DNA from: Octopus bimaculoides
Taxonomy: Eukaryota
Assembly (NCBI RefSeq): GCF_001194135.2
Contig: NC_068983.1
Span: forward strand, 16,280,340 to 16,330,046
DNA: 49,707 bases
Direction: 5' to 3'
The notes beneath the pieces were generated by a model. It was not told where the DNA came from, did not search any database, and saw only the letters and a list, made by a program, of their open reading frames with translations. The position numbers and the translations under genes are program-made. Each line of letters opens with the position of its first letter. Within the stretch, counting starts at the first letter, position 1. Of the stretch, positions 7,055-49,707 are shown piece by piece.

Positions 7055-9486
7055 GATACATATATATATGTACAATAAGTTTCTTTCAGTTTACATCTAA
7101 TAAAATCCACGCACAAGGTTTTGGTTTGGGTTATACTAGAAGACTCTTGTCCAAGGTGCTGCACAGTAGGACTGAACCCAAGAGCTCATGGCTGGGAAGC
7201 AACTACATATATTTGCTATATAGAATAAGAAGATTTTTGTTTGCTAAAATGTGAAAATGCTACAAGTGAGAGGTACCAGCTGTCCCATAACAATGAGGAA
7301 CAAAGGCCTCAGATTCCCTTACCAAATTGAGGTAGTAACATTTTATAGGGTCATAAAGCACCGAGCTTCAATAAGAGATAATAGAACTCTGAATTAATTA
7401 TGATTTGCTGGGGTGTTTAAAACATACATTAAAATACTATTTCAACAGTATTGATATGAATAAAGATGTAGATAAGTTATATGTCAACACAGAGAGGCCA
7501 GGATAGGCTGCTGCAAGTAAATAGAGAATGAAAAATAAAAAAAATGATAACATTCCAAAGATAATTCAAATGCTTTACTCTAAGTTATATAGTGTGTGCT
7601 AGGTTAGGTTCACATGTACCCAAAGCTTGCAGACAAACATCTTATGTTAACATAGGAAGCAAACTGATAATAAATCAGTTAAAATTCACTCATGACATGG
7701 CACAATATTAAACCAGTATCACTTCATATTCTAGCAAATGGACAAGAATTGATTAGATTCTTTGTCTTAATATATTTTAAAAATGATAAATAAATAAATA
7801 AACGGTACAAAAGCTAACAGAAGTAATTCTATTAAATAATATATAATATAAGAGCAAACAAAAATAGACTCAATAACACAATAATTATTGATATGAAGAG
7901 TTTTATAACAGAACACATATTGCTGACATGCAATCCCTAGATAAATCAAAAAGAACTGATGTAGTCAGACAACAGGAGAAAGCTAAGCAACAAACTTGTC
8001 TCTCCCAAACAAACTGATTCATATCTTGCAATCATTTAAGGATTCCATAAAATTCCACCTAGCCATTATTGGCCTCGTTCAGAATAGAAAACCAAACAGG
8101 AAAATAACCTATTAAATATATGGCTTTTTGGTAATAACTGTTTCTACAATATAGGCACAAAGCCTGCAATTTTAGGGAATGGAGTAAGTTAATTGCATAG
8201 ACCCCAGTGCTCAACTGGTGCATATTTTGATTAATCCTGGAAAAAAAAAAAAAAAGAAAAAAATTAATGGGAAAAGTTGATCTCAGTGGGATTTGAACTC
8301 AGAACATAAAGAGCTGAAAGACATGCCACTAAGCATTTTGTATGACACACCAATAATCCTGCCAGCTTGCTACCTTATAAAAGTAGTAAAAATTACCACC
8401 GCCACCACTGCTACTGCCACCACTCTGCCACAGCCACCACCATTACCATCATCATCTGCTTTACCATGCTTGTATTGGTCAGACATGATTCACTGAGACA
8501 GGTTTTCTACAGCCAGCTGCTCTTCCTCTTTCCAGGCAAGGTAATATCCCTCCCCCTCTGTCCAAACATGTTTTCAAAGAAGATTGAAAATAAACGTCAC
8601 CACTTGTATGAAGGATGAAGTTTGTTTACATTTAGCATGTGATGCCAAGCCAAGGAGACATGCACTTTCTCTCTCTCTCTCTCTCTCACATATGCACACA
8701 CATATATGTGAATATTCCTATGTATGCATGTATATATCTACTCATACATACACACATACGTACATACATACATACATACATACAAACAATGGGCTCATTT
8801 CAGCTCCACCTATCATATCTACTCACAAGGCTTTGGTCAATCCAGGGCTATAGTTAGAAGACACTTGCCCAAGATGTCATGCAGTGGGACAGAACCCAAA
8901 ACCACTTATTTGAAGCCTGTATCTTTTCCTATTTTGCCAGTAACCTTGAGAAAGGCATGAATGTCACACAATTTCATTGTCTTCTCTTCTACTGAGATAT
9001 TTTGCATAGCAGTTTTTTGACATCCTCATCTTTCATTCTGAGTTCAAACACCATCAAGGTGAACTCTACCTTTCATCCTTCCAGAGGCAATGAAAATGTA
9101 CCATTCCTGGGTGGTGCACTGACAAGACTGTAAAAACATCAGATCAGATGCTTGATGGTATTTTCCCAGGTTCTTTGTGTTCCAAGTTCAAATCCCACCA
9201 CAGCCTACTTCAGTGGATGGAGCTAATCTGTTGCCTGAATTTGCACCATCTTTGGACACCTCGAGTACCTTTAACAAAGCCCTCTCTGTTGCAAGCATTT
9301 GCACCAGGTCTCCAGTTTGGGGACACAGTTCTCTCTGTCTGGCTGACTTACTCACTCTCTTTCACTCTCTCTACTTCTCCTTCCCCCCATCCCTCCATTT
9401 TAGAGGCTCTGTAAAGAGTCAGGGCACTGCCTTTCCTCTGACTAAAACAAAAAAAGAACTATTAAACAAAAATTGTTAATCAAATG

Positions 9487-9643
9487 GAAGTGTGGCTGTG
9501 CAGTTAAGGAGCTTGCTTCCCAACCATGTGGTTTTGGGTTCAGTCCCACTGTATGGCACTTGGGCAAGTGTCTATTATTATATCTCTGAGCTGATCAAAG
9601 CCTTGTGAATGGATTTGATAAATGGAAAACTGAAAGAAGCCTG

Positions 9644-9679
<36 letters not shown>

Positions 9680-21629: not shown

Positions 21630-21791
21630 GTGATTTTACTAATAAAATAAATGGATGTTCATTGGTTTCAGGCATTGAATTAGCAAGTAAGTAGTGGAGC
21701 AATCTACAGACTCCAATAACCTTAACCCTTTTATTACCATATTCCTCTTGAAATTCATAGTCTTTATTTCAGTTAATTTGAAAATAATGTA

Positions 21792-22929
21792 GGATTTTTC
21801 TATCTACTTAATAATCTTTGCAACCATCTGAATAATCTTTGCAGCCAAGTGAATAATTTTTGCAAGCAATTTAATAATCTTTGCAAGCAATTTAATAATT
21901 TTTGCAAGCAATTTGATAATAAAAATTAGAAAAATTTTAAACATACACTTCTGTACAATTTATAAAACAAGGTAGTTCTTATGGAATAAAATTCTAAATT
22001 TGAAAAAGTTTGAAATATATTTGATCAAAGCACCCTAGACTGATATTGAAACTAAACTGTTTTAAATTCTAAAAAGTTCAAGAAAATAGATTTTTTTTTG
22101 TCTATAAAAATAGACAAAAAACCTTTCTAATTGGGTCTTGGAGACATTTGGCATTCAAGTATCAATAAGTACTATTGATAGAAACCTTTGCCAGTTTCAT
22201 TATACTTTAAAAACGGTCATGCTCGTTTCTCAGGGAGGCATATGCCATTGCTTATTGGAATCTTGAAGCGGATAATAATAAGAACTTTGGTCTTGTTACC
22301 ACCTAAAACCCTACTTCATCTAAAAAGACAAACAGAGGTTGTAATAGGAGTGGGCAATCAACATATGTATCTGTACTGGCTGCTCAAAGCAGAAGCATTT
22401 CTGTTGTAGTGGCCATGAATAAATATAGTATGATATACCATAAAATCTATAAGAAGACAGTAAATGAAGATTTTAAGAGATCTCTCCAAGAATTAAAGGC
22501 ATAAGAAATCCAGTATTTATTATGGATGATGCCAGAATTCACCACTACAGGGGGCTGTCTGAAGATTTGGAAGTAGCTACTTATAACATTAGGTATCTTC
22601 CACCATATTCCCCTTTTCTCAACCCAACAGAAAATATATTCTTTTTGGCAGAATTTGGTAATAAGGGGAAGTGCTATTAATGTAGAGGTCTTAGGGCACT
22701 TATTGAAAATAAGTTTGGGGGAATAACAGCAGAACACTGTGGGGCCCTTTTACAGAAAAATGTTGGGCTGTCTAATACATTCTGCAAAGCGAGAAATAAT
22801 TCTTGAATGAATTTATTTTCAATTCTTTTTATATAAATTTTTATTATTATATTGCTTGCAAAAATTATTAAATTGCTTGCAAAGATTATTCAAATAGTTG
22901 CAAAGATTATTAAGTAGGTAGAAAAATCC
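21792..22929 (+). mobile_element. IS630/Tc1/mariner-superfamily DNA transposon (D34E spacing, Gambol/IS630-like), internally decayed, long TIRs, TA target duplication
   Basis: Ends read TA|GGATTTTTCTATCTACTTAATAATCTTTGCAAC (21792) and its reverse complement ending ...GTAGGTAGAAAAATCC|TA (22929). Both arms carry 21-bp direct repeats. Transposase remnants lie between them. Confidence 0.88.
22080..22810 (+). pseudogene. Frameshifted DDE transposase (IS630/Tc1-like)
   Basis: Manual translation gives WVLETFGIQVSISTIDRNLCQFHYTLK, then SRSISVVVAMNKYSMIYHKI, then GIRNPVFIMDDARIHHYRGLSEDLEVATYNIRYLPPYSPFLNPTENIF, then FYRKMLGCLIHSAKREIILE* (stop 22808-22810). Asp at 22525 and Glu at 22630 are separated by 34 residues. 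The first catalytic Asp could not be located and appears deleted. Confidence 0.88.
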
Positions 22930-23564
22930 TATAAATAATTTGTTAAAATAATTGTTATTAAGCTGGAGTTTGAAACAAAAATTAAAGGGGGGGAAATTTT
23001 GCTGGTAAGTTTTAATTAAAACAATACAGTGGGATGAAACCTGAGAGCTCATAATAGCTAAATGAACTTCATAATGAGTTGAACATTCTGAGTCCAGTGA
23101 TTTTATGAGGGACACAATGAAATACTGGTAAAAGGAAATAAAAATGACCAGTTGGATGGCATATTGCCTGGTCTAGGATCTCATTGTAACACTACAAGGT
23201 AAAACGGATAAAAAAGAAAAGCTTTCCATGGTGATCATCATACAATGTCAAAGAAATGTTAGAAATTTAAAAAAGAAATATTGATTTATAAGACAGAGAG
23301 GGAGACGTGGTGAGCAGTAATGATATAGGCGAAATGCATTCGTTATAATCAGGAATCAAAATAGGACTTGCTCCAAATCAGCTTACCTCCTACTTACACA
23401 CACACACACACACACACACACAAGCAAGCACATAAATGCAAAACAAGGTGGAAAAAAATACTCAAATACCAAAGGAAGAGTAATGTGATTTTATTAAAGC
23501 TGAAAAAAATCTGTGAAACTGAGTAACAGTTTGTGAAGATTTTTTCAGTTTCATGTCTATGAGA

Positions 23565-25817: not shown

Positions 25818-25975
25818 CATGGCTGTGTAGTTAAGAAGCTTGCTTCCCAACCACATGGTCTTAAGTTCAGTCCCACTGCATAGCACTTTGGGCAAGTGTC
25901 TTCTACTATAACCTTGGACTGAACAAAGCCTTGTGAGTCGATTTGGTAGACAGAAACCAAGAGGAGCTCATTGTG
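25818..25975 (+). mobile_element. Family A SINE head and core only
   Basis: CATGGCTGTGTAGTTAAGAAGCTTGCTTCCCAACCACATGG...GCACTTTGGGCAAGTGTCTTCTACTATA. Similar partial copies lie at about 535-680 (-), 7075-7205 (-), 8788-8905 (-), 33595-33750 (-) and 47172-47305 (-). Confidence 0.8.
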
Positions 25976-27456
25976 TGTATGTGTGTCCACTCATTACAAA
26001 TATGGAGATGAGTTAAGAGAGGTTGTGGGCTCATTTCATGTAAAGCTCTAAGAAAAGAACTTAAAAACTCATTTCAGTGTGAAGAACGAATTGAGGTTCC
26101 TGTGTTGTAATAGAATTGGAAATGGTTTTTGTAATTACAAATATTAAAGTGAAGAGATAGTAATGTCAAAATTAATTTAGCTCTTTTGAAGTAGATTCCT
26201 TCCATTGCAGCTTAGTAGACTACAAAGTCATAGATTTTGTTGTTAGATTAGTTACTTTGTTTAGATTGAATTAGAGATGTGTGAGAACTCTATTCCTCTT
26301 ATTGATTGTCTGATGTTTGGAACTTAACCACTTAATTCTTCTGTGGCCAAGTTTCTAAGTGCTTCAATTAATTTTTAAAATAATCATGAATTGTGATGGA
26401 TTTAGTAAAATAACTAATTCTGTCACTATTAATCTAGTGATCAGAATATAACAAATATTCTTTTTATTTAAAATTTTTTTTTTTATCCGTTTTAATCATT
26501 AGACTGCAGTCATACTTGGACACTGCCTTGACAGGTTTAGTTAAATAAATTGACCTTGTTATTTGTTTTTAAAATCTGGTGCTTATTCAATTGCTCTCCT
26601 TTGTTGAATTGCTAAGTTACAGGGTTGTAAACAAAGCAACACAGGTTGTCAAGCAGGGCAACCTATATTTCTAGTGAGCAGACAATCTATGTATTTCAAA
26701 TGATTTTCATAGAAGTCAAAATTTAAGAGGGCTATGCTAAAATACTTGCAACTTTATATAGTGAGGCATTAATTTAGCCCCAGGTCAGCTATATGACCAA
26801 AAGAGATACATCTTGATTACGCCATAATTTTGATTATAACAAACAGTCTACATTAACATATCCTATTTTAAAAGAAATGGACATGACTTGGGAGAGATTT
26901 AGCTGTTATTTTTAGTAGGTCGATCAACTGCATAGAGGAACTTTCATTGACTCATTTATATAATGGTATGTAAAGCTGTTGTGTTGACCAACAGAAATCT
27001 CACAATATTGTTCACAGGAAGTCTCAGGGGCCTTGGTATTAAAAATTTTAAGCCAACACAGTGATACTTTATCAACTCAGACATATTGTTATAGCAAAAT
27101 CTACACAATATCTAATCAATGTCAAATAATAAACAAAATAAAAGATTATTCTGCAGCTTATTCAATCAGTGAAACCGTAGAGCAGGCATTCTTCTACATA
27201 CATATATTGTAATAAGGAATATCATTTCAAATTTTGGCACAAGATCAGAAATTTTAGGGGAAGGTGTAGGCGATTATATTGACTAGTACTTTATTTTATT
27301 GACTTCGAAAAAAGGAAGAGCCAAGTTAACTTCAGTGGCATTTGAACTGAGAATGTAGAGCTGAAAGAAATGCTGCTAAGCATTTTGTCCAACAGGGTAA
27401 ACAACTCTGTCAGCTCAATGCTTTTTTGTAACAAGATCACTAGATAGTATATGTAA

Positions 27457-27764
27457 TGTTGGCACTCCGTCGCTTACGACGTCGAGGGTTCCAGTTGATC
27501 CGATCAACAGAACAGCCTGCTCGTGAAATTAACGTGCAAGTGGCTGAGCACTCCACAGACACGTGTACCCTTAACGTAGTTCTCGGGGATATTCAGCGTG
27601 ACACAGTGTGACAAGGCTGACTCTTTGAATTACGGGTACAACAGAAACAGGAAGTAAGAGTGAGAGAAAGTTGTGGTGGAAGAGTACAGCAGGGTTCACG
27701 ACCATCCCCTGCCGGAGCCTCGTGGAGCTTTAGGTGTTTTCGCTCAATAGGCACTCACAACGCC
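27457..27764 (-). mobile_element. Same young SINE family, head lost in the assembly gap
   Basis: Near-identical to the two full copies up to the N-run at 27765. Confidence 0.88.
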
Positions 27765-29069: not shown

Positions 29070-29101
<32 letters not shown>

Positions 29102-29264
29102 CGACGGGCTTCTTTCAGTTTCCGTCTACCAAATCCACTCACAAGGCTTTGGTCGGCCCGAGGCTATAGTAGAAGACACTTGCCCAACGTGCCACGCAGT
29201 GAGACTGAACTCGGAACCATGTGGTTTGTAAGCAAGCTACTTACCACACAGCCACTCCTATGCC
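28852..29264 (-). mobile_element. tRNA-head CORE-like SINE ('family A') with internal (TA)n and a (GTAAAAGA)n-type tail
   Basis: Minus strand GGAGTGGCTGTGTGGTAAG...GAGTTCAGTCTC (A/B boxes), GGCACGTTGGGCAAGTGTCTTCTACTATAGCC (CORE-like), a microsatellite, then the tail ending GACTGAAACAAGTAAAAGAGTAAAAGAG. Confidence 0.85.
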
Positions 29265-31000: not shown

Positions 31001-31231
31001 TTTACCTCTTTTGATATCAACCTGTCTAGGACTCCCCAGATTCTATGATACAAAGTTCATGTTTTAAAGTGATCTATATTAAAATCTTCCATCAAAACTT
31101 CATGCTAATTTATGTTCCAAACAGTAGCTTAACATTGACAAAGTTATTTTGATAAATTCTTCGTTAGTTTCAAAATTAATTTAAACAAGGACAGTGTATT
31201 TCATCAGAAATATGGTAACAAAAAAGGTTAA
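31001..31231. mobile_element. TTAA-type MITE family 2
   Basis: Ends TTTACCTCTTTTGATATCAA and TGGTAACAAAAAAGGTTAA. The interior is the reverse complement of 28612-28788 and of the pieces flanking 21792-22929. Confidence 0.7.
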
Positions 31232-32677
31232 ATATTTTATTTCTAAGGAAGATGTCAATCTCTCTCAACACCCAGTGTCTCCTCCATGACATCTGCTTCC
31301 CACTAGTGAGCTTAGATTGCCCTCAAGGAAATGCTATCATCCAAGTTAAGAACTACTGTTTTGACCTCAGAAACTGAATGTAGTGAGGTGTGTGAGGAAA
31401 GAGAACTAAGAAGAGATTGTTGACAGCTATTCCCCACCAAACCCTGAAACTATTTACCATTTTGACATATCCATTTTAAGATTCAACAATCCAGGATAAT
31501 TTTTTCCCTTCTCAAATGCAATTATTGGAAATTATTTCAAACCTGTCTTTCAGGTTTTACAATATTTCACAATACAAACAACTCTAACTTTTTAAACAGA
31601 ACAAAGAAAAGAATTTAGTACATAAACCATGACGCCTGAGAATTTTAGATGAGAAATAGGAACAAAAAGTGACAGTCATACATTTTTTTAAAGAGAGAGA
31701 GAGGGGTGGATTAGGGGTGTAATTGAAATGAAATGCTGGAAATCAAATCCTGCTCATAAGCTCAGTTTATTAACCAAGAGCTGGGAACAAAAAAATAAAA
31801 AAACTCATTGAAACTGTTGCAGTTTGTTCCATTCATTGAAGTTGGATTAAATTTTCCTTTCATCTAGAAACGACAGAAAAGTTGAAGCAATTTCAACTAA
31901 GCAAGCAACCTGAGCTTAGGAACAATATTAACTATTAAGCAGGTGGCAACCTAGACCACCACAGAAATCAATACAAACAGGCAATCTGAGAAGAGTAACA
32001 GAACAAATCTATTTTTAGTACTATTGGCAATTCTCAGGCAATTTCCCCCCCCCCCCCACTAAAATAGACTCTGACCCTATATGCAGTACACAGAAGTATT
32101 GCAGCTATTATAAGTAAAGGAAATAGAAACTAAATAAATACACAGAGAAACACACGCATGCACGCACACACGAAGCTGCATCAATTAGTCTATATTGCTA
32201 AGCAACCGAAGCATCTGTTAGAGTAGTGATATGCAGCAACAAGTATCAACATGCAACAAAGCTGTTTAAGAGAAAACAGTTTTAAAAATATGGAAGCTGT
32301 GAAGTAGGTATCGGGAGGCAAAAAAAAAAAAAAAAAAAAAAAACAAACTAGTTGAATGACACTAAATATAAGCTGACAAGTGCTCAGGTTGATTAGAAGA
32401 AATGCTTATTTGGTTTAAACACACCCACATACACAGAAAGGGATTATAATTGTCAAAATTGCTTAAAGTAAGATAAGTAGCCTTTTTTAAAAAAAAAGAG
32501 CGGCAGCATTTTAATTGATAACTGAGTCACTAAGTACTTCCCTTTGATAAGCATATTGATAAAATGATGCTCAAATACTCAAAGAATATCATCACATATG
32601 TAAGCTGACCTTAGTGAGATTTGAACTCAGATTGCAAGGTACAGGAAGAAATACCATAAGGCATTTTGTCTGACATT

Positions 32678-33059
32678 GTTGGCACTCCGTCGCTTACGGC
32701 GTCGAAAGTTCCAGTTGATCCGATCAACGGAACAGCTTGCTCGTGAAATTAACGTGCAAGTGGCTGAGCACTCCACAGACACGTGTCCCCTTAATGTAGT
32801 TCTCGGGGATATTCAGCGTGACACAGTGTGACAAGGCTGACCCTTTGAATTACAGGCACAACAGAAACAGGAAGTAAGAGTGAGAGAAAGTTGTGGTGGA
32901 AGAGTACAGCAGGGTTCGCCACCATCCCCTGTCGGAGCCTCGTGGAGCTTTTAGGTGTTTTTGCTCAATAAACACTCACAACGCCCGGTCTGGGAATTGA
33001 AACCACGATCCTATGACTGCAAGTCCGCTGCCCTAACCACTGGGCCATTGCACCTCCAC
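32678..33059 (-). mobile_element. Full-length young tRNA-derived SINE (octopus OR1-like), 382 bp
   Basis: Minus-strand head GGAGGTGCAATGGCCCAGTGGTTAGGG (A box) ... GGTTTCAATTCCC (B-box-like). Perfect 12-bp TSD TTGTCTGACATT at 32666-32677 and 33060-33071. The family name is recalled, not checked. Confidence 0.9.
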
Positions 33060-33574: not shown

Positions 33575-35710
33575 TACACACATAAATATATATACAAGCT
33601 TCTTTCAATTTCTATCAACCAAATCCAGTCATAAGGCCTGTGATCAACCTCGGGTTATAGTACAAGAAGACAGTTGCCCAAGGTGCTATGCAGTAGACTG
33701 AACCCAAGACCACATAGTTGTGAAACAAGGTTCTTAACCACACAGCCATAATTATTGTTTTGATAACAGAAAATTAAATAGCAATGAAGATGATGATAAT
33801 GAAGGTACAATTTTAGATCCACTTTGCTATGGCTTCATGGTTTTTGTTAAAGTTACATATTACATGTAGAAATTCATTCTACTATTAATCTCTCAACTTT
33901 GTCAGATAGGTAAACTAAAGCAAGCTAAGTCCTATACTTTGTCCACAGGCAAAACAGCTGTTGGTTGTAGTAAGGGTTGAACTCAGAACAATATATAATT
34001 GAATACATAAAATGATTTGGGAAATACAGCATCCTCTTCTCAAACATCTCCATTTCACTCTTTTAGTTATCACTTTCTTCTATTAATTTCAATCACATTT
34101 GCCTTGAAAGAATGAATACAATACAGAGAAGAAAGAACACTTTTATTCATGCAGGGGACAAGGCTACAATAAAATGCACCTAGTACAAGCAGTATAGTCT
34201 TTAGTTTTGCAGAGAACAATAGTAATCTCACTAGTGCTAATGATATGACAAAATGCAGCCAATACACACTGTGAAGTGACTGGTGTGAAGGAGGGTATCT
34301 AGCCATAGAAACCACTATAAAAAGAAAAATGTTTGAGTAAGAAGTGATTCCCCAATCCATTTAAGAGGGCTGTTATTCCAAATAAGAACTGACTCCAATC
34401 ATCATATGTCTGTTTTCTATGCCAGCATCCAAAACAGACATAATTGTGATAGCATGGCCCTCTGACAGGAGAGCACTATTTCCAAATAAGAATGGCTCCA
34501 GGCTGTGACAATCCATTCAGCCCATCCAATGTGGAAAACAGACATGATGATGATGATTGTAGTGGTGGTCCTTTTCTTTTCAAAATAATGTTCAATAAGG
34601 AAATCTGGGGGAATGGTTTGTCTATGGCATAAAAGTTTCCACTTTAACTCTGATGACAATATAATGATAGTTTATAAACCCAGAACTTAGCTCCAATGCT
34701 AGAAATCAAAGAAAACTGATAGCAGCATAAAACCAAACCCATTTATTTCCATGGATGTGGAGCAAAATGTATCTCTATTCTTTGGAATATATTGTTCATC
34801 CTGTTTACGAAACTATTCCAAAAAGCTTTATAGAGAAACAATAGATCAATCGAGCAACAAATCCAAAATTCCAAGAAAATTACACTACGATTATAGAATT
34901 CAATGTATTCATTTCTGAATCATTTTTGTAATTTTTAGCCAATTAAGTCATCTGGCAATTTATTATAACTATTTAATATCATTTTCTATGGTGGAATTTT
35001 TTCCCCTTTCTAAATTTAAATATTTGCATATAAATTGTTGGAAGAAGCATTTTTACAGTTGGATGCCTTTCCGAGCACTAACCGCGCTCAATTAGGAAAT
35101 AGAAGTAGCATCTATTTTCAGCCAGCCATTCTGATACAAGCAGCAGAGTAGTAATATGCATCTCCACACAATGGTAGTAGGAAAGTTTGGGTCAGTTACA
35201 CAACACCTTAACCTCAAAGATAAAAATATTATTATTACTGTTATTGTTGTTTTTATTATTATTATTATTATTATTAATCATCAGCATCATCAGATAAATA
35301 TCCTGCTTTACATAATTCTGCTCTGTGCTTATTAAAAAAAAAAAATCATTATCTTTGTTATTAGAATCAATACGGCTAACATATAAGAATACTGACATAA
35401 ATACATTGCAGTATTAAATTTCATCTTGCAGCACTTGGTTCAAATCCTACATAAGTCATATTGGTTTTTTTATTTTTCAGAATCCACAGAAAAAAAACAA
35501 AAAAACTCATCATCATTATTATTATTCAATTCAACGAGGGTAGAGCAAGGAACAAAATGCCTTGCTGTATTTAGTTATCTGCTTTACATGCTTGACTTGC
35601 CCTTCCACCTATCAGTAAGTACCAGTCAAGTTCTGGGTGGCTGATATAATAGACTGTCTTTTAGTGCTCAAAATTTTGTCTCTTGTGCCTGTTTTATATA
35701 TCAATATCAA

Positions 35711-36055: not shown

Positions 36056-36450
36056 CAGGCATGACTGCGTGATTAAGAAATTCACCCGATAACCATGTGT
36101 TTTTAAGTTCAATCCCACTACAAGTTACTTTGGGCAAGTGTCTTCTATTATAGCTCTGGAGTCAACCAGAACCTTGTGAATGAATTTGATAGGCAGAAAC
36201 TGAAAAGTAGCTCATTGTATATGTGTGCATTTCTGTCATCTTGTCTTGAAACCACATGCTAATAGTAAACAAATGTCACCATTCTACAAGCAGTGTTGTT
36301 TGTTTGCAGTGCCCCATGACCAGGGGAAAATATTACATTGCCTGAAAACAAGTCAGGGCTGATGACAGGAAGAACTGTAGAACTCTACTCCAATGCAATC
36401 TGCATACCACATGTAAGCAAGGCAAAGTAGATGTTAAAACAATGATATAG
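36056..36450 (+). mobile_element. Diverged family A SINE with the (GAT)n-type tail
   Basis: Head and core, plus a tail homologous to 9680-9880. Confidence 0.7.
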
Positions 36451-36496: not shown

Positions 36497-36880
36497 TGTT
36501 GTTGGCACTCCGTCGCTTACGACGTCGAGGGTTCCAGTTGATCCGATCAACGGAACAGCTTGCTCATGAAATTAACGTGCAATTGGTTGAGCACTCCACA
36601 GACACGTGTACCCTTAACGTAGTTCTTGGGGATATTCAGCGTGACACAGTGTGACAAGGCTGGCCCTTTGAATTACAGGCGCAACAGAAACAGGAAGTAA
36701 GAGTGAGAGAAAGTTGTGGTGAAAGAGTACAACAGGGTTCGCCACCACCCCCTGCCGGAGCCGCGTGGAGCTTTAGGTGTCTTCGCTCAATAAACACTCA
36801 CAACGCCCGGTCTGGAAATTGAAACCGCGATACTATGACCACGAATCCGCTGCCCTAATCACTGGGCCATTGCGCCTCCA
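36497..36880 (-). mobile_element. Full-length young SINE of the same family
   Basis: Near-identical to 32678-33059; TSD GTGTTGTGTAGT / GTGTTCTGTAGT (11 of 12 match). Confidence 0.9.
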
Positions 36881-38239: not shown

Positions 38240-38817
38240 ATGATAAAATGTCAGATCAAATGATTTTGGGGAATAATTGGTTTTTACCATAAGTTCGTGC
38301 AAAATTTTTCTACAATTGCGGAACTGTTGACAAATTTGTTGAAAAGACCCAAACCATGAAGTGGTCCTCAGAGTGTGAAACAGCTTTTGAGAAACTTAAG
38401 TTGGTTTTACAAAATTCCCTGGTTTTAAAAGCGCCTGATTTTGAGAAACCATTCTCATTGATGACTGATGCATCCAATGTAGGTACTGGCACGGTTTCAT
38501 TACAAGCATGCCAATCTGGAGTAGATTGTCCAGTGGCATACTTTTCTAGGAAGTTTAATTCTTGTCAGAAGAATTATTCTACTGTTGGGAAAGAGTGTTT
38601 AGCTCTTGTGTGGGCAGTTCAGCACTTTCAAATCTATATAGGTTTAAATCCCACCACTGTCTACACAGATCACAATCCCTTAGTTTTCATTAATAAGGTG
38701 AAAGGTACTAATCAGAGGATTCTGAGGTGGAGCTTGTACCTGCAACAGTTTAGTTTGAATATTTGTCATATTGCAGAAAATGATAATTTACTTGCAGATG
38801 CACTATCCAGGTGTTAG
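38240..38817 (+). pseudogene. pol: Ty3/gypsy pol fragment: RT thumb/connection plus RNase H-like domain, ending in a stop directly after RNase H
   Basis: QIK*FWGIIGFYHKFVQNFSTIAELLTNLLK (38252-38344), a 1-nt frameshift, then ORF 38356-38817 with KWSSECETAFEKLK, PDFEKPFSLMTDASNVG, PVAYFSRKF, NYSTVGKECLALVWAV, VYTDHNPL, RWSLYLQ and ADALSRC*. Confidence 0.95.
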
Positions 38818-42175: not shown

Positions 42176-42545
42176 TGTGTTGTTGAGAAACTTGCTTCCC
42201 AACCATGTGACCTTGAGTTCAATCCCACAGCATAGCACTTTGGGCAAGTGTCTTCTACTACAGTGTTGGGTTGACCAAAGTGTTGTGAGTGGATTCGATA
42301 GATGGAAACTGACAAGAAGCCCATGATATGTGTGTGCTTATCCCATGGTATGTGTGTGCCTACGACTTGACAACCAGTGCTGGTTTGTTTACATCCCTGT
42401 AACTTAGTGGTTCAGCAAAAGAGACCAGTAGAATAAGTACCAGGCTTTAAAAATAAGTACTAGGGGTCGATTTGTTTAACTTAATCCTTCAAAGTGATGC
42501 TTCAGCATGGCCACAGTCCAATGACTGAAACAATTAAAAGATATA
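42176..42545 (+). mobile_element. Family A SINE with the same tail type as 28852-29264
   Basis: CTTGCTTCCCAACCATGTG...GCACTTTGGGCAAGTGTCTTCTACTA...GACAACCAGTGCTGG...GACTGAAACAATTAAAAG. Confidence 0.8.
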
Positions 42546-43301: not shown

Positions 43302-44255
43302 GGTCATCATCATCATCATCATCGTTTAACGTCCGCCTTCCATGCTAGCATGGGTTGGACAATTTGACTGAGGACTGGTGAAACCGGATGGCAACACCAG
43401 GCTCCAATCTAATTTGGCAGAGTTTCTACAGCTGGATGCCCTTCCTAACGCCAACCACTCAGAGAGTGTAGTGGGTGCTTTTACGTGTCACCCGCACGAA
43501 AACGGCCATGCTCGAAATGGTGACTTTTATGTGCCACCCGCACAAGAGCCAGTCCAGGGGCACTGGCAACGATCTCGCTCGAAAAACCTCATGTGTCACC
43601 CGCACAAGAGCCAGCCCAGGGGCACCGGCAACGATCCCGCTCGGAAGATTTCATGTGGTGTGCATGTATACTAAGATTTAATGTTCTAGCTCACTTCTGT
43701 TGAGTAGAGAATCTGCATCAAATTTTGCCAACAGTTTGGCATGAGCAGCCTATGNNNNNNNNNNNNNNNNNNNNNNNNNNNNNNNNNNNNNNNNNNNNNN
43801 NNGGTCATCATCATCATCATCATCGTTTAACGTCCGCCTTCCATGCTAGCATGGGTTGGACAATTTGACTGAGGACTGGTGAAACCGGATGGCAACACCA
43901 GGCTCCAATCTAATTTGGCAGAGTTTCTACAGCTGGATGCCCTTCCTAACGCCAACCACTCAGAGAGTGTAGTGGGTGCTTTTACGTGTCACCCGCACGA
44001 AAACGGCCATGCTCGAAATGGTGACTTTTATGTGCCACCCGCACAAGAGCCAGTCCAGGGGCACTGGCAACGATCTCGCTCGAAAAACCTCATGTGTCAC
44101 CCGCACAAGAGCCAGCCCAGGGGCACCGGCAACGATCCCGCTCGGAAGATTTCATGTGGTGTGCATGTATACTAAGATTTAATGTTCTAGCTCACTTCTG
44201 TTGAGTAGAGAATCTGCATCAAATTTTGCCAACAGTTTGGCATGAGCAGCCTATG
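43302..44255. other. 453-bp tandem duplication on either side of a 48-N gap (probable assembly artefact)
   Basis: 43302-43754 and 43803-44255 look identical (offset 501; identical ORF translations) and both end or start exactly at the gap. Confidence 0.85.
43305..43653 (-). mobile_element. 5'-truncated young copy of the (GAT)n-tailed module with a 6-bp TSD
   Basis: Flanked by TGTGGT at 43299-43304 and 43654-43659; inserted in the left arm of the mariner derivative. Confidence 0.85.
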
Positions 44256-48010: not shown

Positions 48011-49521
48011 TATTATGACCAGGTTCCAACCTGGGCCAAAATTATTTGCCATCAGCTACATCTGTCCCATCAGGGTCTGAAGATGCAGTGTCGTAAGTGC
48101 ATACATGTGCATACATTTCGTGTATTCATGTGTAATCAGTGTATTTTCTCACATTTGTATGTATGTATGTATGTATGTATAAATATATAAATGATTTAGA
48201 ATGAAAGTAAACTTCCAGCCTGCTTTGCACCTTCCCCTTTTTCCTTTCACTCTTCTTTATTCTCTCCACTCTGTCTTTTTCTCAATTTTTCTCCCCTCTA
48301 TCAATCCTCTTTCACCTAAATGAACTACAAGTGACTATATGTTTTGTGAATTATTAAAAATATAACTTAAGGACTTACAAAGTCCATAATAAAGCTCAAG
48401 GGTCTTGAAAAAGCAAAATTTATAATTTTGTTAAACTCAAATATGAGTCAAAAAGTAAATTCAACAATAGGTTTCTACACATTTTGTTAAACTTAACACT
48501 GAAGCTTTGTCTTAAAGTTTCCATGTAACATGTACCATTAATGTGTAAATCCCCTGTGAAGTGTACCACTAACTTTTGTCCTGTATATTACAAGTTTGAA
48601 AAGACTGAGAACCAGTGCTCTAATTTTTCATCTTCAAAGACCTAATGCACACATTTTCTCATTCTGTTTACATAATTAGAACCTCACAAACAGATGAAAC
48701 TTTCTGCAAAGAGACAAAATTTTCTTCTTCTGCCATCTAAATTGATTTATGAAATTAAATTTTGGGGTTATTAATTTGGAGAAAGTTGTATGAAGAAAAA
48801 TAAGTTACTTCAAATATATCTTTGTAAATGGAAAAGATACATATTTTTCTACTAATTGACACAACATAGAATGCTTATACAATTTCATTTTCCATAACAT
48901 ATGTGCAATATCTTGCGCGTGTTTTAAGGGAAACCTAATGAACCAACAAAACTAAAGAAAAAGAAAAAAAATTAAAAAAGGGGATAAAATGGACTTTTTA
49001 AAATAAAAATTATACAGATTTTTGACAGGTTAATTCAAACAGATTACTTGTTTCCAAAGAGTTAATTACAATCTTTAACACCTGTGAAATAAAAAGTTAG
49101 AACAAAAAAAGGCACATACAAAATTACAAGAATAGTAGAAGACAAGGATGAATAAAGTTTACTTTGTTTAAGAAGGTGATATAAAATATAGATGAGTTCA
49201 CTATCATAAATGATTTTTATTGAAATCATATGTCTTACATTTTAACTGTTACTATGTAAACACACAGGCATAGTTACAGATTCAGTCCAATTGCATTGCA
49301 CCTTGGGCAAGTGTTTCATGGCAATAAAGGACTTTTCACAGTCATAATTCTTTTTCCTCTTTTAGTTTAATCGAAAATATTTCCGCTGATTTTAATAATT
49401 CTCTTGCTTCTTTATTTAAACTAGAATTTTTTTTTGTCTATTATTCATTTGCAATATTGAAAATGAATTAAGAATTCATGTACATTCTGAACAATCATTT
49501 GGCTGAAGTAATTTAAAGTAT

Positions 49522-49674
49522 AGGCCTGGCTGTGCGGTAAGAAGCTTGTTTCCCAACCACATGGTTCTGAGTTCAGTTCCTCTGTGTGGAACCTTGGGCA
49601 AATATCTTCTACTGTAGCCTAGGGCCAACCAAAGCCTTGTGAGTGGATCTGGTAGAGAGAAACTGAAAGAAGCT

Positions 49675-49680
<6 letters not shown>
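49522..49680 (+). mobile_element. Family A SINE head and core running into (TA)n at the window end
   Basis: GGCCTGGCTGTGCGGTAAGAAGCTTGTTTCCCAACCACATGGTTCTGAGTTCAGTTCC...CCTTGGGCAAATATCTTCTACTGTAGCC. Confidence 0.85.

Positions 49681-49707
<27 letters not shown>

What the first reader, a model, noticed from the sequence alone, without database searches (positions are those of the whole stretch)
21792..22929. IS630/Gambol-like D34E transposon, invisible to the ORF track and nested in a MITE
A 1138-bp TA-flanked element encodes a frameshifted transposase with IMD(N)ARIHH...YLPPYSPFLNP.E and exact 34-residue D-E spacing. Its motifs (VSISTIDR..FHYTLK, LPPYSPFLNP, long TIRs) look closer to IS630-like/Gambol proteins than to classical Tc1 (WPSQSPDLNPIE). 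From memory, similar proteins occur in small parasitic eukaryotes such as microsporidia and myxozoans; this is unverified. Here the element sits inside a host MITE, so it is a real integration and not a contaminant contig. That makes it a candidate horizontal transfer.
Basis: partly seen in the sequence, partly recalled or inferred. Interest (0 to 1): 0.75.

Follow-up and report, generated by a model that had tools for sequence, protein, structure and literature searches.

The report
Dead IS630-like transposon copy
This is a real but long-dead, single copy of a cut-and-paste DNA transposon from a known, widespread IS630-like branch of the Tc1/mariner group, which is ordinary, and horizontal transfer is possible but not shown.

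Summary
The element is real. Window 21790-21931 carries about 140-nt terminal inverted repeats (TIRs; the best 89-nt arms are 91% complementary), TA at both ends, and a broken DDE_3 transposase with D-34-E spacing.

The first catalytic D is present but lies in a 47-bp internal inversion. About 115 N-terminal residues are deleted. There are five frameshifts.

Intact relatives (58-60% amino-acid identity at best) form a well-supported eukaryotic clade, separate from the Tc1-like reference sequences. Full-length members pass NCBI's IS630 model. The clade includes four microsporidian genera, Marteilia, Octopus sinensis and many unnamed environmental eukaryotes. Anopheles DD34E proteins (probably Gambol) are a weakly supported sister group.

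Across the clade the ends share a TA-TAGGGTTT terminus and TIRs built from tandem 21-bp units.

"Nested in a MITE" is only partly supported. The joined flanks match one other place in the window (about 160 bp, 72%), but that repeat shows no MITE hallmarks.

Horizontal transfer is not demonstrated.

Verdict: an ordinary decayed transposon, a new member of a known kind.

The parts
21788..21791 (.). Left junction TGTA.
   Evidence: Ten ends of five relatives all read TA-TAGGG.
21790..21927 (+). Left terminal inverted repeat: terminus TAGGATTTTTCTATC followed by 5.4 tandem 21-nt units (21808-21920, consensus TTTGCAAGCAATTTAATAATC).
21928..22116 (+). Residual 5' internal region with no recognisable coding. 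Relatives have about 475 bp here, so about 285 bp are missing, including the start codon and residues 1 to about 115 (first helix-turn-helix). Contains a perfect 10-bp-stem palindrome at 22097-22120.
   Evidence: sequence.
22117..22233 (+). Coding remnant A: KNLSNWVLETFGIQVSISTIDRNLCQFHYTLKTVMLVSQ. It corresponds to residues 116-154 of P0003 (second helix-turn-helix).
22229..22285 (+). Coding remnant B (LREAYAIAYWNLEADNNKN), in another frame. About 29 bp are deleted between A and B.
22286..22332 (-). In-place 47-bp inversion, bounded by TTTG/CAAA. It encodes FVFLDEVGF*VVTRP on the minus strand. The first catalytic D is at 22318-22320 (minus strand), and the block carries one nonsense codon.
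   Evidence: Flipping it restores one reading frame with both flanks.
22333..22501 (+). Coding remnant C: (N)RGCNRSGQSTYVSVLAAQSRSISVVVAMNKYSMIYHKIYKKTVNEDFKRSLQELKA.
22498..22641 (+). Coding remnant D: GIRNPVFIMDDARIHHYRGLSEDLEVATYNIRYLPPYSPFLNPTENIF. Second catalytic D at 22525-22527, catalytic E at 22630-22632, 34 residues between them.
22640..22810 (+). C-terminal remnants in three frame segments (22640-22711, 22708-22743, 22742-22807), then the family's own stop codon at 22808-22810. It ends ...REIILE* like the relatives.
22836..22931 (-). Right terminal inverted repeat: 3.4 tandem 21-nt units (22843-22913) and the terminus ...GATAGGTAGAAAAATCCTA.
22930..22933 (.). Right junction TATA, holding the TA target-site duplication under either boundary model.
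21722..21789 (.). Left half of the interrupted host sequence. Together with 22932-23016 it aligns to window 31078-31231 (minus strand).
22932..23016 (.). Right half of the interrupted host sequence.
31078..31231 (-). Uninterrupted paralogue of the insertion site (72% identity over about 160 bp). It serves as an approximate empty site.

Best explanation
Window 21790-22931 is one decayed, non-autonomous copy of a cut-and-paste DNA transposon of the IS630-Tc1-mariner group.

It belongs to a eukaryotic DD34E lineage that is distinct from Tc1. Its intact members encode a transposase of about 340-390 aa with a paired-like double helix-turn-helix and an RNase-H-fold DDE domain.

Inferred mechanism: the DNA-binding domain recognises the 21-bp units that are tandemly repeated in each long TIR. 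The 21-bp period equals two helical turns, which would place all sites on one face of the DNA. The paired ends are then cut and integrated at a TA, which is duplicated.

This copy inserted into a repeated host sequence and then died in place. It lost the 5' third of the gene, suffered a 47-bp inversion across the first catalytic aspartate, and accumulated five frameshifts and a nonsense codon. It can make no transposase. Because both termini and at least three units per end survive, it could at most be moved in trans by an intact relative. None is seen in the window.
For: Shown:
- TIRs and TA flanks.
- Pfam DDE_3 at E=8.9e-16.
- D-34-E spacing, and invariant D, D, E columns in 35 relatives.
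- The lesions mapped against three relatives.
- Structure model of relative P0003 (pLDDT 83). It matches full-length Mos1 (E=5e-15), the Sleeping Beauty catalytic domain (TM-score 0.73) and the Pax paired domain.
- NJ tree with 200 bootstraps: core clade containing the window 90%, all eukaryotic IS630-like sequences 75%, Tc1-like references a separate 90% clade.
- The IS630 HMM gives 150 bits for full-length relatives.
- The TIR is alignable at DNA level to relatives from a soil metagenome, an ENA eukaryote and Octopus: 75-79% over about 130 nt.
- Period-21 arrays occur in 9 of 10 family elements. The unit sequence differs in Marteilia and in L119, but the period does not.
- The TA-TAGGGTTT terminus is shared.
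- Only one copy lies in the window.

Inferred: that the 21-bp units are the transposase binding sites, and that the copy could be moved in trans.
Against: - The tree is a neighbour-joining tree on 129 columns, and branching inside the core clade is poorly supported (<55%).
- The position of the family relative to bacterial IS630 is unresolved (33-46%).
- On the catalytic domain alone, the IS630 model separates this family from Sleeping Beauty only modestly (73 vs 52 bits).
- No binding or transposition data exist for any member.
Confidence: 0.9

Rival explanations
1. The copy, or its lineage in this host, arrived by horizontal transfer from an intracellular parasite (a microsporidian or a paramyxid) or from another aquatic invertebrate.
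For: - The core clade mixes four microsporidian genera, Marteilia, Octopus sinensis, a transposon-rich ENA eukaryote and soil metagenome sequences, in no organismal order.
- The window's 21-bp unit matches the Cucumispora unit at 19 of 21 positions and the Hamiltosporidium unit at 18 of 21.
- Parisot et al. 2014 (PMC4202319) documented exchange between microsporidia and metazoans for other transposon families.
- The element's GC content is 30.6% against 34.9% for its flanks.
Against: - No close partner exists. The best protein identity is 58-60%, and DNA identity is at most about 82% over patches under 140 bp.
- Giant-virus contigs hold only relatives at 23-25% identity.
- The copy is old (TIR arms 9% diverged, many lesions).
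- Internal tree nodes are unsupported.
- The parasite bias in named hits is partly due to annotation and word-index effects. The profile search added Octopus, Anopheles and Tetranychus.
- The host is unknown, so no dS or congruence test is possible.
Confidence: 0.25
2. It is a member of the described DD34E/Gambol superfamily rather than of a separate lineage.
For: - As described in PMC7386202, Gambol is DD34E, has TA duplications, falls outside Tc1 and may derive independently from IS630. All of this fits.
- Anopheles gambiae, funestus and arabiensis encode DD34E non-Tc1 relatives (P0311, P0324, P0335) that are sister to the core clade.
- The An. gambiae element has very long TIRs of about 0.5-0.8 kb, in line with the long Gambol TIRs implied in PMC3212995.
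Against: - The sister relationship has only 37% support.
- Identity to the window copy is 30-32%.
- The An. gambiae element lacks 21-bp arrays.
- No authenticated Gambol sequence could be retrieved.
- Two sequences labelled DD34E-Aa and DD34E-Ag in the Sailor paper's alignment, which may or may not be Gambol, fall with Tc1.
Confidence: 0.35
3. It is a contaminant or an assembly artefact, not a true insertion in this genome.
For: The window has five N gaps and one exact 453-bp duplicate across a gap, so the assembly is imperfect.
Against: - The element lies more than 4.8 kb from the nearest N gap.
- Its two flanks join into a sequence that has a paralogue 8 kb away in the same window.
- Its heavy decay is typical of a resident fossil.
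Confidence: 0.03

Closest known systems
Microsporidian 'independent' Mariner/Tc1 group of Parisot et al. 2014 (PMC4202319), and the DDE-like endonuclease genes annotated in Hamiltosporidium, Cucumispora and Dictyocoela
   Same: - DDE_3 transposase of the same clade: 53-56% identity to the window remnant, and the core clade has 90% support.
- The Cucumispora and Hamiltosporidium elements fetched here share the TA-TAGGGTTT terminus and near-identical 21-bp TIR units.
- Parisot et al. described their group as lying outside Tc1, mariner and maT and as clustering with a cyanobacterial sequence.
   Different: The window copy sits in a large, repeat-rich genome of animal type and is dead. That Parisot's group is the same clade is inferred from their description. 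Their sequences were not compared here.
Bacterial IS630 family (NCBIfam NF033545)
   Same: Full-length relatives match the whole model at 150 bits against a cut-off of 100. They share DD34E-35E chemistry and the TA target.
   Different: - The best prokaryotic relatives are only 21-36% identical.
- The eukaryotic clade is separate (75%), and its link to the sampled IS630 sequences is unresolved.
- The long array-type TIRs are not an IS630 feature. That last point is from general knowledge and was not tested.
DD34E/Gambol (Coy and Tu 2005, as summarised in PMC7386202)
   Same: DD34E, TA duplication, long TIRs, outside Tc1. Anopheles relatives are the nearest named outgroup.
   Different: About 30-40% identity, no 21-bp arrays in the An. 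gambiae element examined, and membership not testable here.
Tc1 / Sleeping Beauty (DD34E/Tc1)
   Same: Same fold and the same D-34-E spacing. Both have binding sites inside long inverted repeats; this IR/DR analogy is from general knowledge.
   Different: - Sequence similarity is marginal (E=0.11 to SB100X).
- The motifs differ: MDNARIHH and LPPYSPFLNPIE here, against QDNDPKH and WPSQSPDLNPIE in Tc1.
- It forms a separate clade.
- It has 3-16 tandem units per end rather than two sites.

Membership tests
IS630-Tc1-mariner (ITm) group | Terminal inverted repeats and a TA target-site duplication | tested here: met
   Arms of 89 nt at 91%. TA lies on both sides under one boundary model, or TA and TG under the other.
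IS630-Tc1-mariner (ITm) group | DDE/D triad in an RNase-H-fold domain, preceded by a paired-like helix-turn-helix domain | tested here: met
   All three catalytic residues are found, the first one inside an inversion. Pfam DDE_3. The model of a relative matches Mos1, SB and Pax. In the window copy the first helix-turn-helix is deleted.
DD34E/Tc1 family | 34 residues between the second D and the E | tested here: met
DD34E/Tc1 family | Groups with Tc1 reference transposases | tested here: not met
   The Tc1, TR, IC, TRT and IT references form a 90% clade that excludes it. SB100X scores only E=0.11.
Bacterial IS630 family | Scores above the NF033545 cut-off (100 bits) | tested here: inconclusive
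   Intact relatives score 150 bits. The window's catalytic remnant scores 47.6 bits, because it is partial and decayed. The Sleeping Beauty catalytic domain also scores 52 bits.
Bacterial IS630 family | Clusters with prokaryotic IS630 transposases | tested here: inconclusive
   Identity is 21-36%. The branching order among IS630, Tc1 and this clade is unsupported, at 33-46%.
DD34E/Gambol superfamily | DD34E, TA duplication, phylogenetically outside Tc1/mariner | tested here: met
DD34E/Gambol superfamily | Monophyletic with authenticated Gambol transposases | not testable with these tools
   No Gambol sequence could be retrieved. Probable Gambol proxies from Anopheles are a sister group with 37% support.
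Unnamed 21-bp-array clade (microsporidia, Marteilia, Octopus, environmental sequences) | Transposase falls inside the clade | tested here: met
   90% bootstrap.
Unnamed 21-bp-array clade (microsporidia, Marteilia, Octopus, environmental sequences) | Terminus TA-TAGGGTTT and TIRs made of tandem 21-bp units | tested here: met
   The window has TAGGATTT (one change) and 5.4 / 3.4 units.
MITE (as the host of the insertion) | Short element with its own TIRs, a target-site duplication and many copies | tested here: not met
   There is no inverted repeat between the flanks. Only one other copy lies in 49.7 kb, at 72% identity. The genome-wide copy number is unknown.
Horizontally transferred transposon | Similarity between carriers higher than host divergence allows; tree incongruence; patchy distribution | tested here: inconclusive
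   The distribution looks patchy, but there is no close partner, the internal nodes are unsupported, and the host is unknown.

The most novel reading that the evidence does not exclude
The copy may be a fossil of an as yet unnamed ITm lineage with three defining features: a TA-TAGGGTTT terminus, TIRs built from helically phased 21-bp binding-site arrays, and an IS630-like DD34E transposase. On this reading the lineage circulates by horizontal transfer between aquatic invertebrates (this host, Octopus) and their intracellular parasites (microsporidia, Marteilia).
Probability: 0.25. Interest if true: 0.5.

Novelty: new member of a known kind. Interest (0 to 1): 0.27.

Why it matters
For this window it matters little. 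It is one dead transposon copy with no sign of function.

At family level, the shared terminus and the fixed 21-bp period are a clean, testable architecture for how an ITm transposase reads its ends. The period holds even where the unit sequence differs between subfamilies.

The mix of parasite and host carriers makes the clade a reasonable place to look for host-parasite transposon exchange. The 47-bp inversion shows how a catalytic motif can hide from strand-wise reading.

Tried and rejected
No reads could be laid, so the junctions and the host could not be checked that way, and I did not try another route.
- Host identification through the window's RT/RNase H ORF failed. The best named hits were about 50% identical: Holothuria, Stylophora, Macrobrachium.
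- A 21-kb Octopus sinensis locus and two ENA eukaryote loci share no repeats with the window.
- Rfam found nothing in the window.
- Authenticated Gambol sequences were sought in four papers' supplements without success. The accession strings of the best-hit samples occur in no paper.
- My first reading that the first catalytic D was deleted was wrong. It is inverted.
- My first flip of the inversion (22285-22332) left the block out of frame. Flipping 22286-22332 is right.
- The first bootstrap run timed out.
- The support labels of the first tree may have been displaced by re-rooting. It suggested IS630 plus this family at 74%. The recomputed split supports do not resolve that node, and I rely.
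- The unfiltered self-BLAST was swamped by microsatellites and was redone with masking.
- The listing of cluster members gave no organism names.

Full report
**What is there.** Window 21790-22931 is bounded by inverted arms of 89 nt that are 91% complementary (21790-21878 and 22843-22931). The terminal 33-mer occurs only at these two places, with none expected by chance. Each arm is a terminus (TAGGATTTTTCTATC) followed by tandem 21-nt units. There are 5.4 units on the left (21808-21920) and 3.4 on the right (22843-22913). TA lies directly outside GGATT.../...AATCC on both sides. No ORF above 96 aa exists in the element, so an ORF track would miss it. A stitch of three reading frames gives a 234-aa pseudo-protein that hits Pfam DDE_3 at E=8.9e-16. 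The second aspartate (22525-22527) and the glutamate (22630-22632) are separated by exactly 34 residues.

I mapped three intact relatives onto the DNA. They show the following.
- The first 115 or so residues and the start codon are gone. Only 189 bp separate the left TIR from residue 116, where relatives have about 475 bp.
- About 29 bp are deleted at 22232.
- There are five frame changes on the + strand.
- The motif holding the first catalytic aspartate, FVFLDEVGF*VVTRP, is present but on the minus strand.

Flipping 22286-22332 (47 bp, bounded by TTTG/CAAA) restores one continuous frame...NNKNFVFLDEVGF*VVTRPNRGCNRSGQ.... Four relatives match this block at DNA level in reverse orientation. With the inversion restored, all three catalytic residues are accounted for. 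The copy is nevertheless clearly dead.

**Insertion site.** The two flanks, joined, align contiguously across the insertion point to window 31078-31231 on the minus strand (about 160 bp, 72%). So the element interrupted a sequence that has a paralogue 8 kb away. This argues for a genuine integration. That sequence shows no inverted repeats and has no other copies in the window. Calling it a MITE is therefore unsupported.

**Relatives.** A first protein search found 113 relatives. The best were 53-54% identical, or 58-60% once the inversion is restored. They come from Logan, JGI and ENA contigs of about element size. A profile search with 35 full-length members (alignment A2) widened this to Octopus sinensis LOC115231855 (51.5% to the window), Anopheles gambiae, funestus and arabiensis (30-32%), Tetranychus and a cyprinid fish. 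A full scan of 1.84 billion cluster representatives found 213 clusters at E<=1e-30 and 1741 at E<=1e-10. The family is therefore large and diverse, and the parasite-only picture was partly an artefact. Two members lie on 200-400-kb contigs of a transposon-rich ENA eukaryote assembly.

**Classification.**
- Full-length relatives match NCBIfam's IS630 model end to end at 150 bits, against a cut-off of 100. Sleeping Beauty is only marginally similar by sequence (E=0.11).
- As a control, on the catalytic domain alone the IS630 model gives 73 bits to P0003, 47.6 to the window remnant and 52 to Sleeping Beauty. Discrimination there is modest.
- Prokaryotic genomes hold only relatives at 21-36% identity, and giant-virus contigs only at 23-25%.
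- I built a neighbour-joining tree of the catalytic domain (129 columns, 200 bootstraps). References came from the Sailor paper's alignment (PMC8533490).
  - The core clade containing the window has 90% support.
  - All eukaryotic IS630-like sequences together have 75% support.
  - The Tc1, TR, IC, TRT and IT references form a separate clade at 90%.
  - The Anopheles proteins are sister to the core clade at only 37%.
  - The order among IS630, Tc1 and this lineage is unresolved.
- An earlier tree suggested a link to IS630, but its support labels are unreliable.
- As summarised in PMC7386202, Gambol is DD34E, has TA duplications and falls outside Tc1. The Anopheles proteins are therefore probably Gambol, but I could not obtain authenticated Gambol sequences.
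- Parisot et al. 2014 (PMC4202319) already reported a microsporidian Mariner/Tc1 group lying outside Tc1, mariner and maT and clustering with a cyanobacterial sequence. That is most likely this lineage.

**Family architecture.** I examined elements from a soil metagenome (L002, L003), the ENA eukaryote (L118, L119), Octopus sinensis (L120), Cucumispora (L122), Hamiltosporidium (L123) and Marteilia (L124).
- The window's TIR aligns at DNA level to L002/L003, L118 and L120 at 75-79% over about 130 nt.
- The ends examined (L002, L120, L122, L123, L124) all read TA-TAGGGTTT.
- All of these elements carry tandem arrays of period 21 in their TIRs, from 3 to 16 units.
- The unit sequence is TTTGCAA(T/G)CAAT(A/T)TAATAATC in the window, Cucumispora and Hamiltosporidium (18-20 of 21 positions shared).
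- The unit is unrelated in Marteilia and in L119, yet the period stays at 21.
- The An. gambiae element has 0.5-0.8-kb TIRs without such arrays.

Because the family terminus itself begins with TA, the window element's ends are ambiguous by 2 bp. They are either 21792-22929 with TA on both sides, or 21790-22931 with TA on the right and a mutated TG on the left.

**Mechanism.** The AlphaFold model of P0003 (pLDDT 83) matches full-length Mos1 (E=5e-15), the Sleeping Beauty and Metnase catalytic domains (TM-score 0.73-0.80) and the Pax paired domain. The family therefore works as a canonical cut-and-paste ITm transposase. I infer that the paired-like domain binds the 21-bp units, and that the two-turn period places the sites on one face of the DNA. 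This is untested. The window copy encodes nothing. It keeps both termini and at least three units per end, so trans-mobilisation is conceivable. No intact partner lies in the window.

**Horizontal transfer.** The clade's carriers do not follow organismal phylogeny, and several are intracellular parasites of aquatic invertebrates. That is suggestive. However, internal nodes have under 55% support. No relative is closer than 58-60% in protein, or about 75-82% in DNA over patches under 140 bp. The copy is old, and the host is unidentified. It is not met as stated, but a molluscan member does exist. Horizontal transfer remains a possibility, not a finding.

**Verdict.** This is a real, correctly spotted but ordinary transposon fossil: a new member of a known IS630-like / Gambol-related kind. 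The inversion and the family-wide 21-bp array architecture are the only points of some interest.

Noticed in passing
window 22286-22332: A 47-bp in-place inversion inside the transposase remnant, bounded by TTTG/CAAA, hides the first catalytic D motif on the opposite strand. It may be a template-switch or hairpin-mediated event.
   Followed up: yes
window 22097-22120: A perfect palindrome, TTTTGTCTAT-AAAA-ATAGACAAAA, lies exactly where the 5' coding deletion ends. It may be a scar of abortive gap repair.
   Followed up: no
L002, L003, L118, L119, L120, L122, L123, L124 (TIR regions): Every core-clade element examined has TIRs made of tandem 21-bp units (3-16 copies). The unit sequence differs in Marteilia (CCGAGCATTAACGACACGTTG) and in L119, but the period is always 21. 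In Cucumispora two unit variants alternate, giving a 41-42-nt super-period.
   Followed up: partly
L121 797-1596 and 3224-3945 (Anopheles gambiae OX030908.1): The An. gambiae relative (LOC133393386, probably a Gambol element) has inverted repeats of 489 nt (99%) plus 218 nt (97%) and no 21-bp arrays.
   Followed up: partly
L004 (JBOHYH010000264.1, 'Arenimonas sp.' MAG, 1363-bp contig): This short contig, binned as a bacterium, encodes a transposase that groups with the eukaryotic clade rather than with bacterial IS630. It may be eukaryotic contamination of the bin.
   Followed up: no
window 43302-43754 and 43803-44255: Two 453-bp stretches are 100% identical and separated only by an N run (43755-43802). 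This looks like an assembly or gap-filling duplication.
   Followed up: no
window 38356-38817 (+): An ORF with the RT_RNaseH and RT_RNaseH_2 domains of an LTR retrotransposon (E=1e-34). Its closest database proteins are only 74% identical.
   Followed up: partly
window 27457-27764, 32676-33058, 36499-36880: Three copies of a 310-380-bp repeat at 93-94% identity, the youngest repeat family in the window.
   Followed up: no
window 8746-8905, 9492-9673, 25819-25986, 29074-29261, 33582-33748, 36091-36227, 42176-42336, 49520-49707: Eight copies of a repeat of about 150 bp (74-87% identity). Several sit next to (TA)n or (CA)n microsatellites, and they may be a SINE- or MITE-like family.
   Followed up: no
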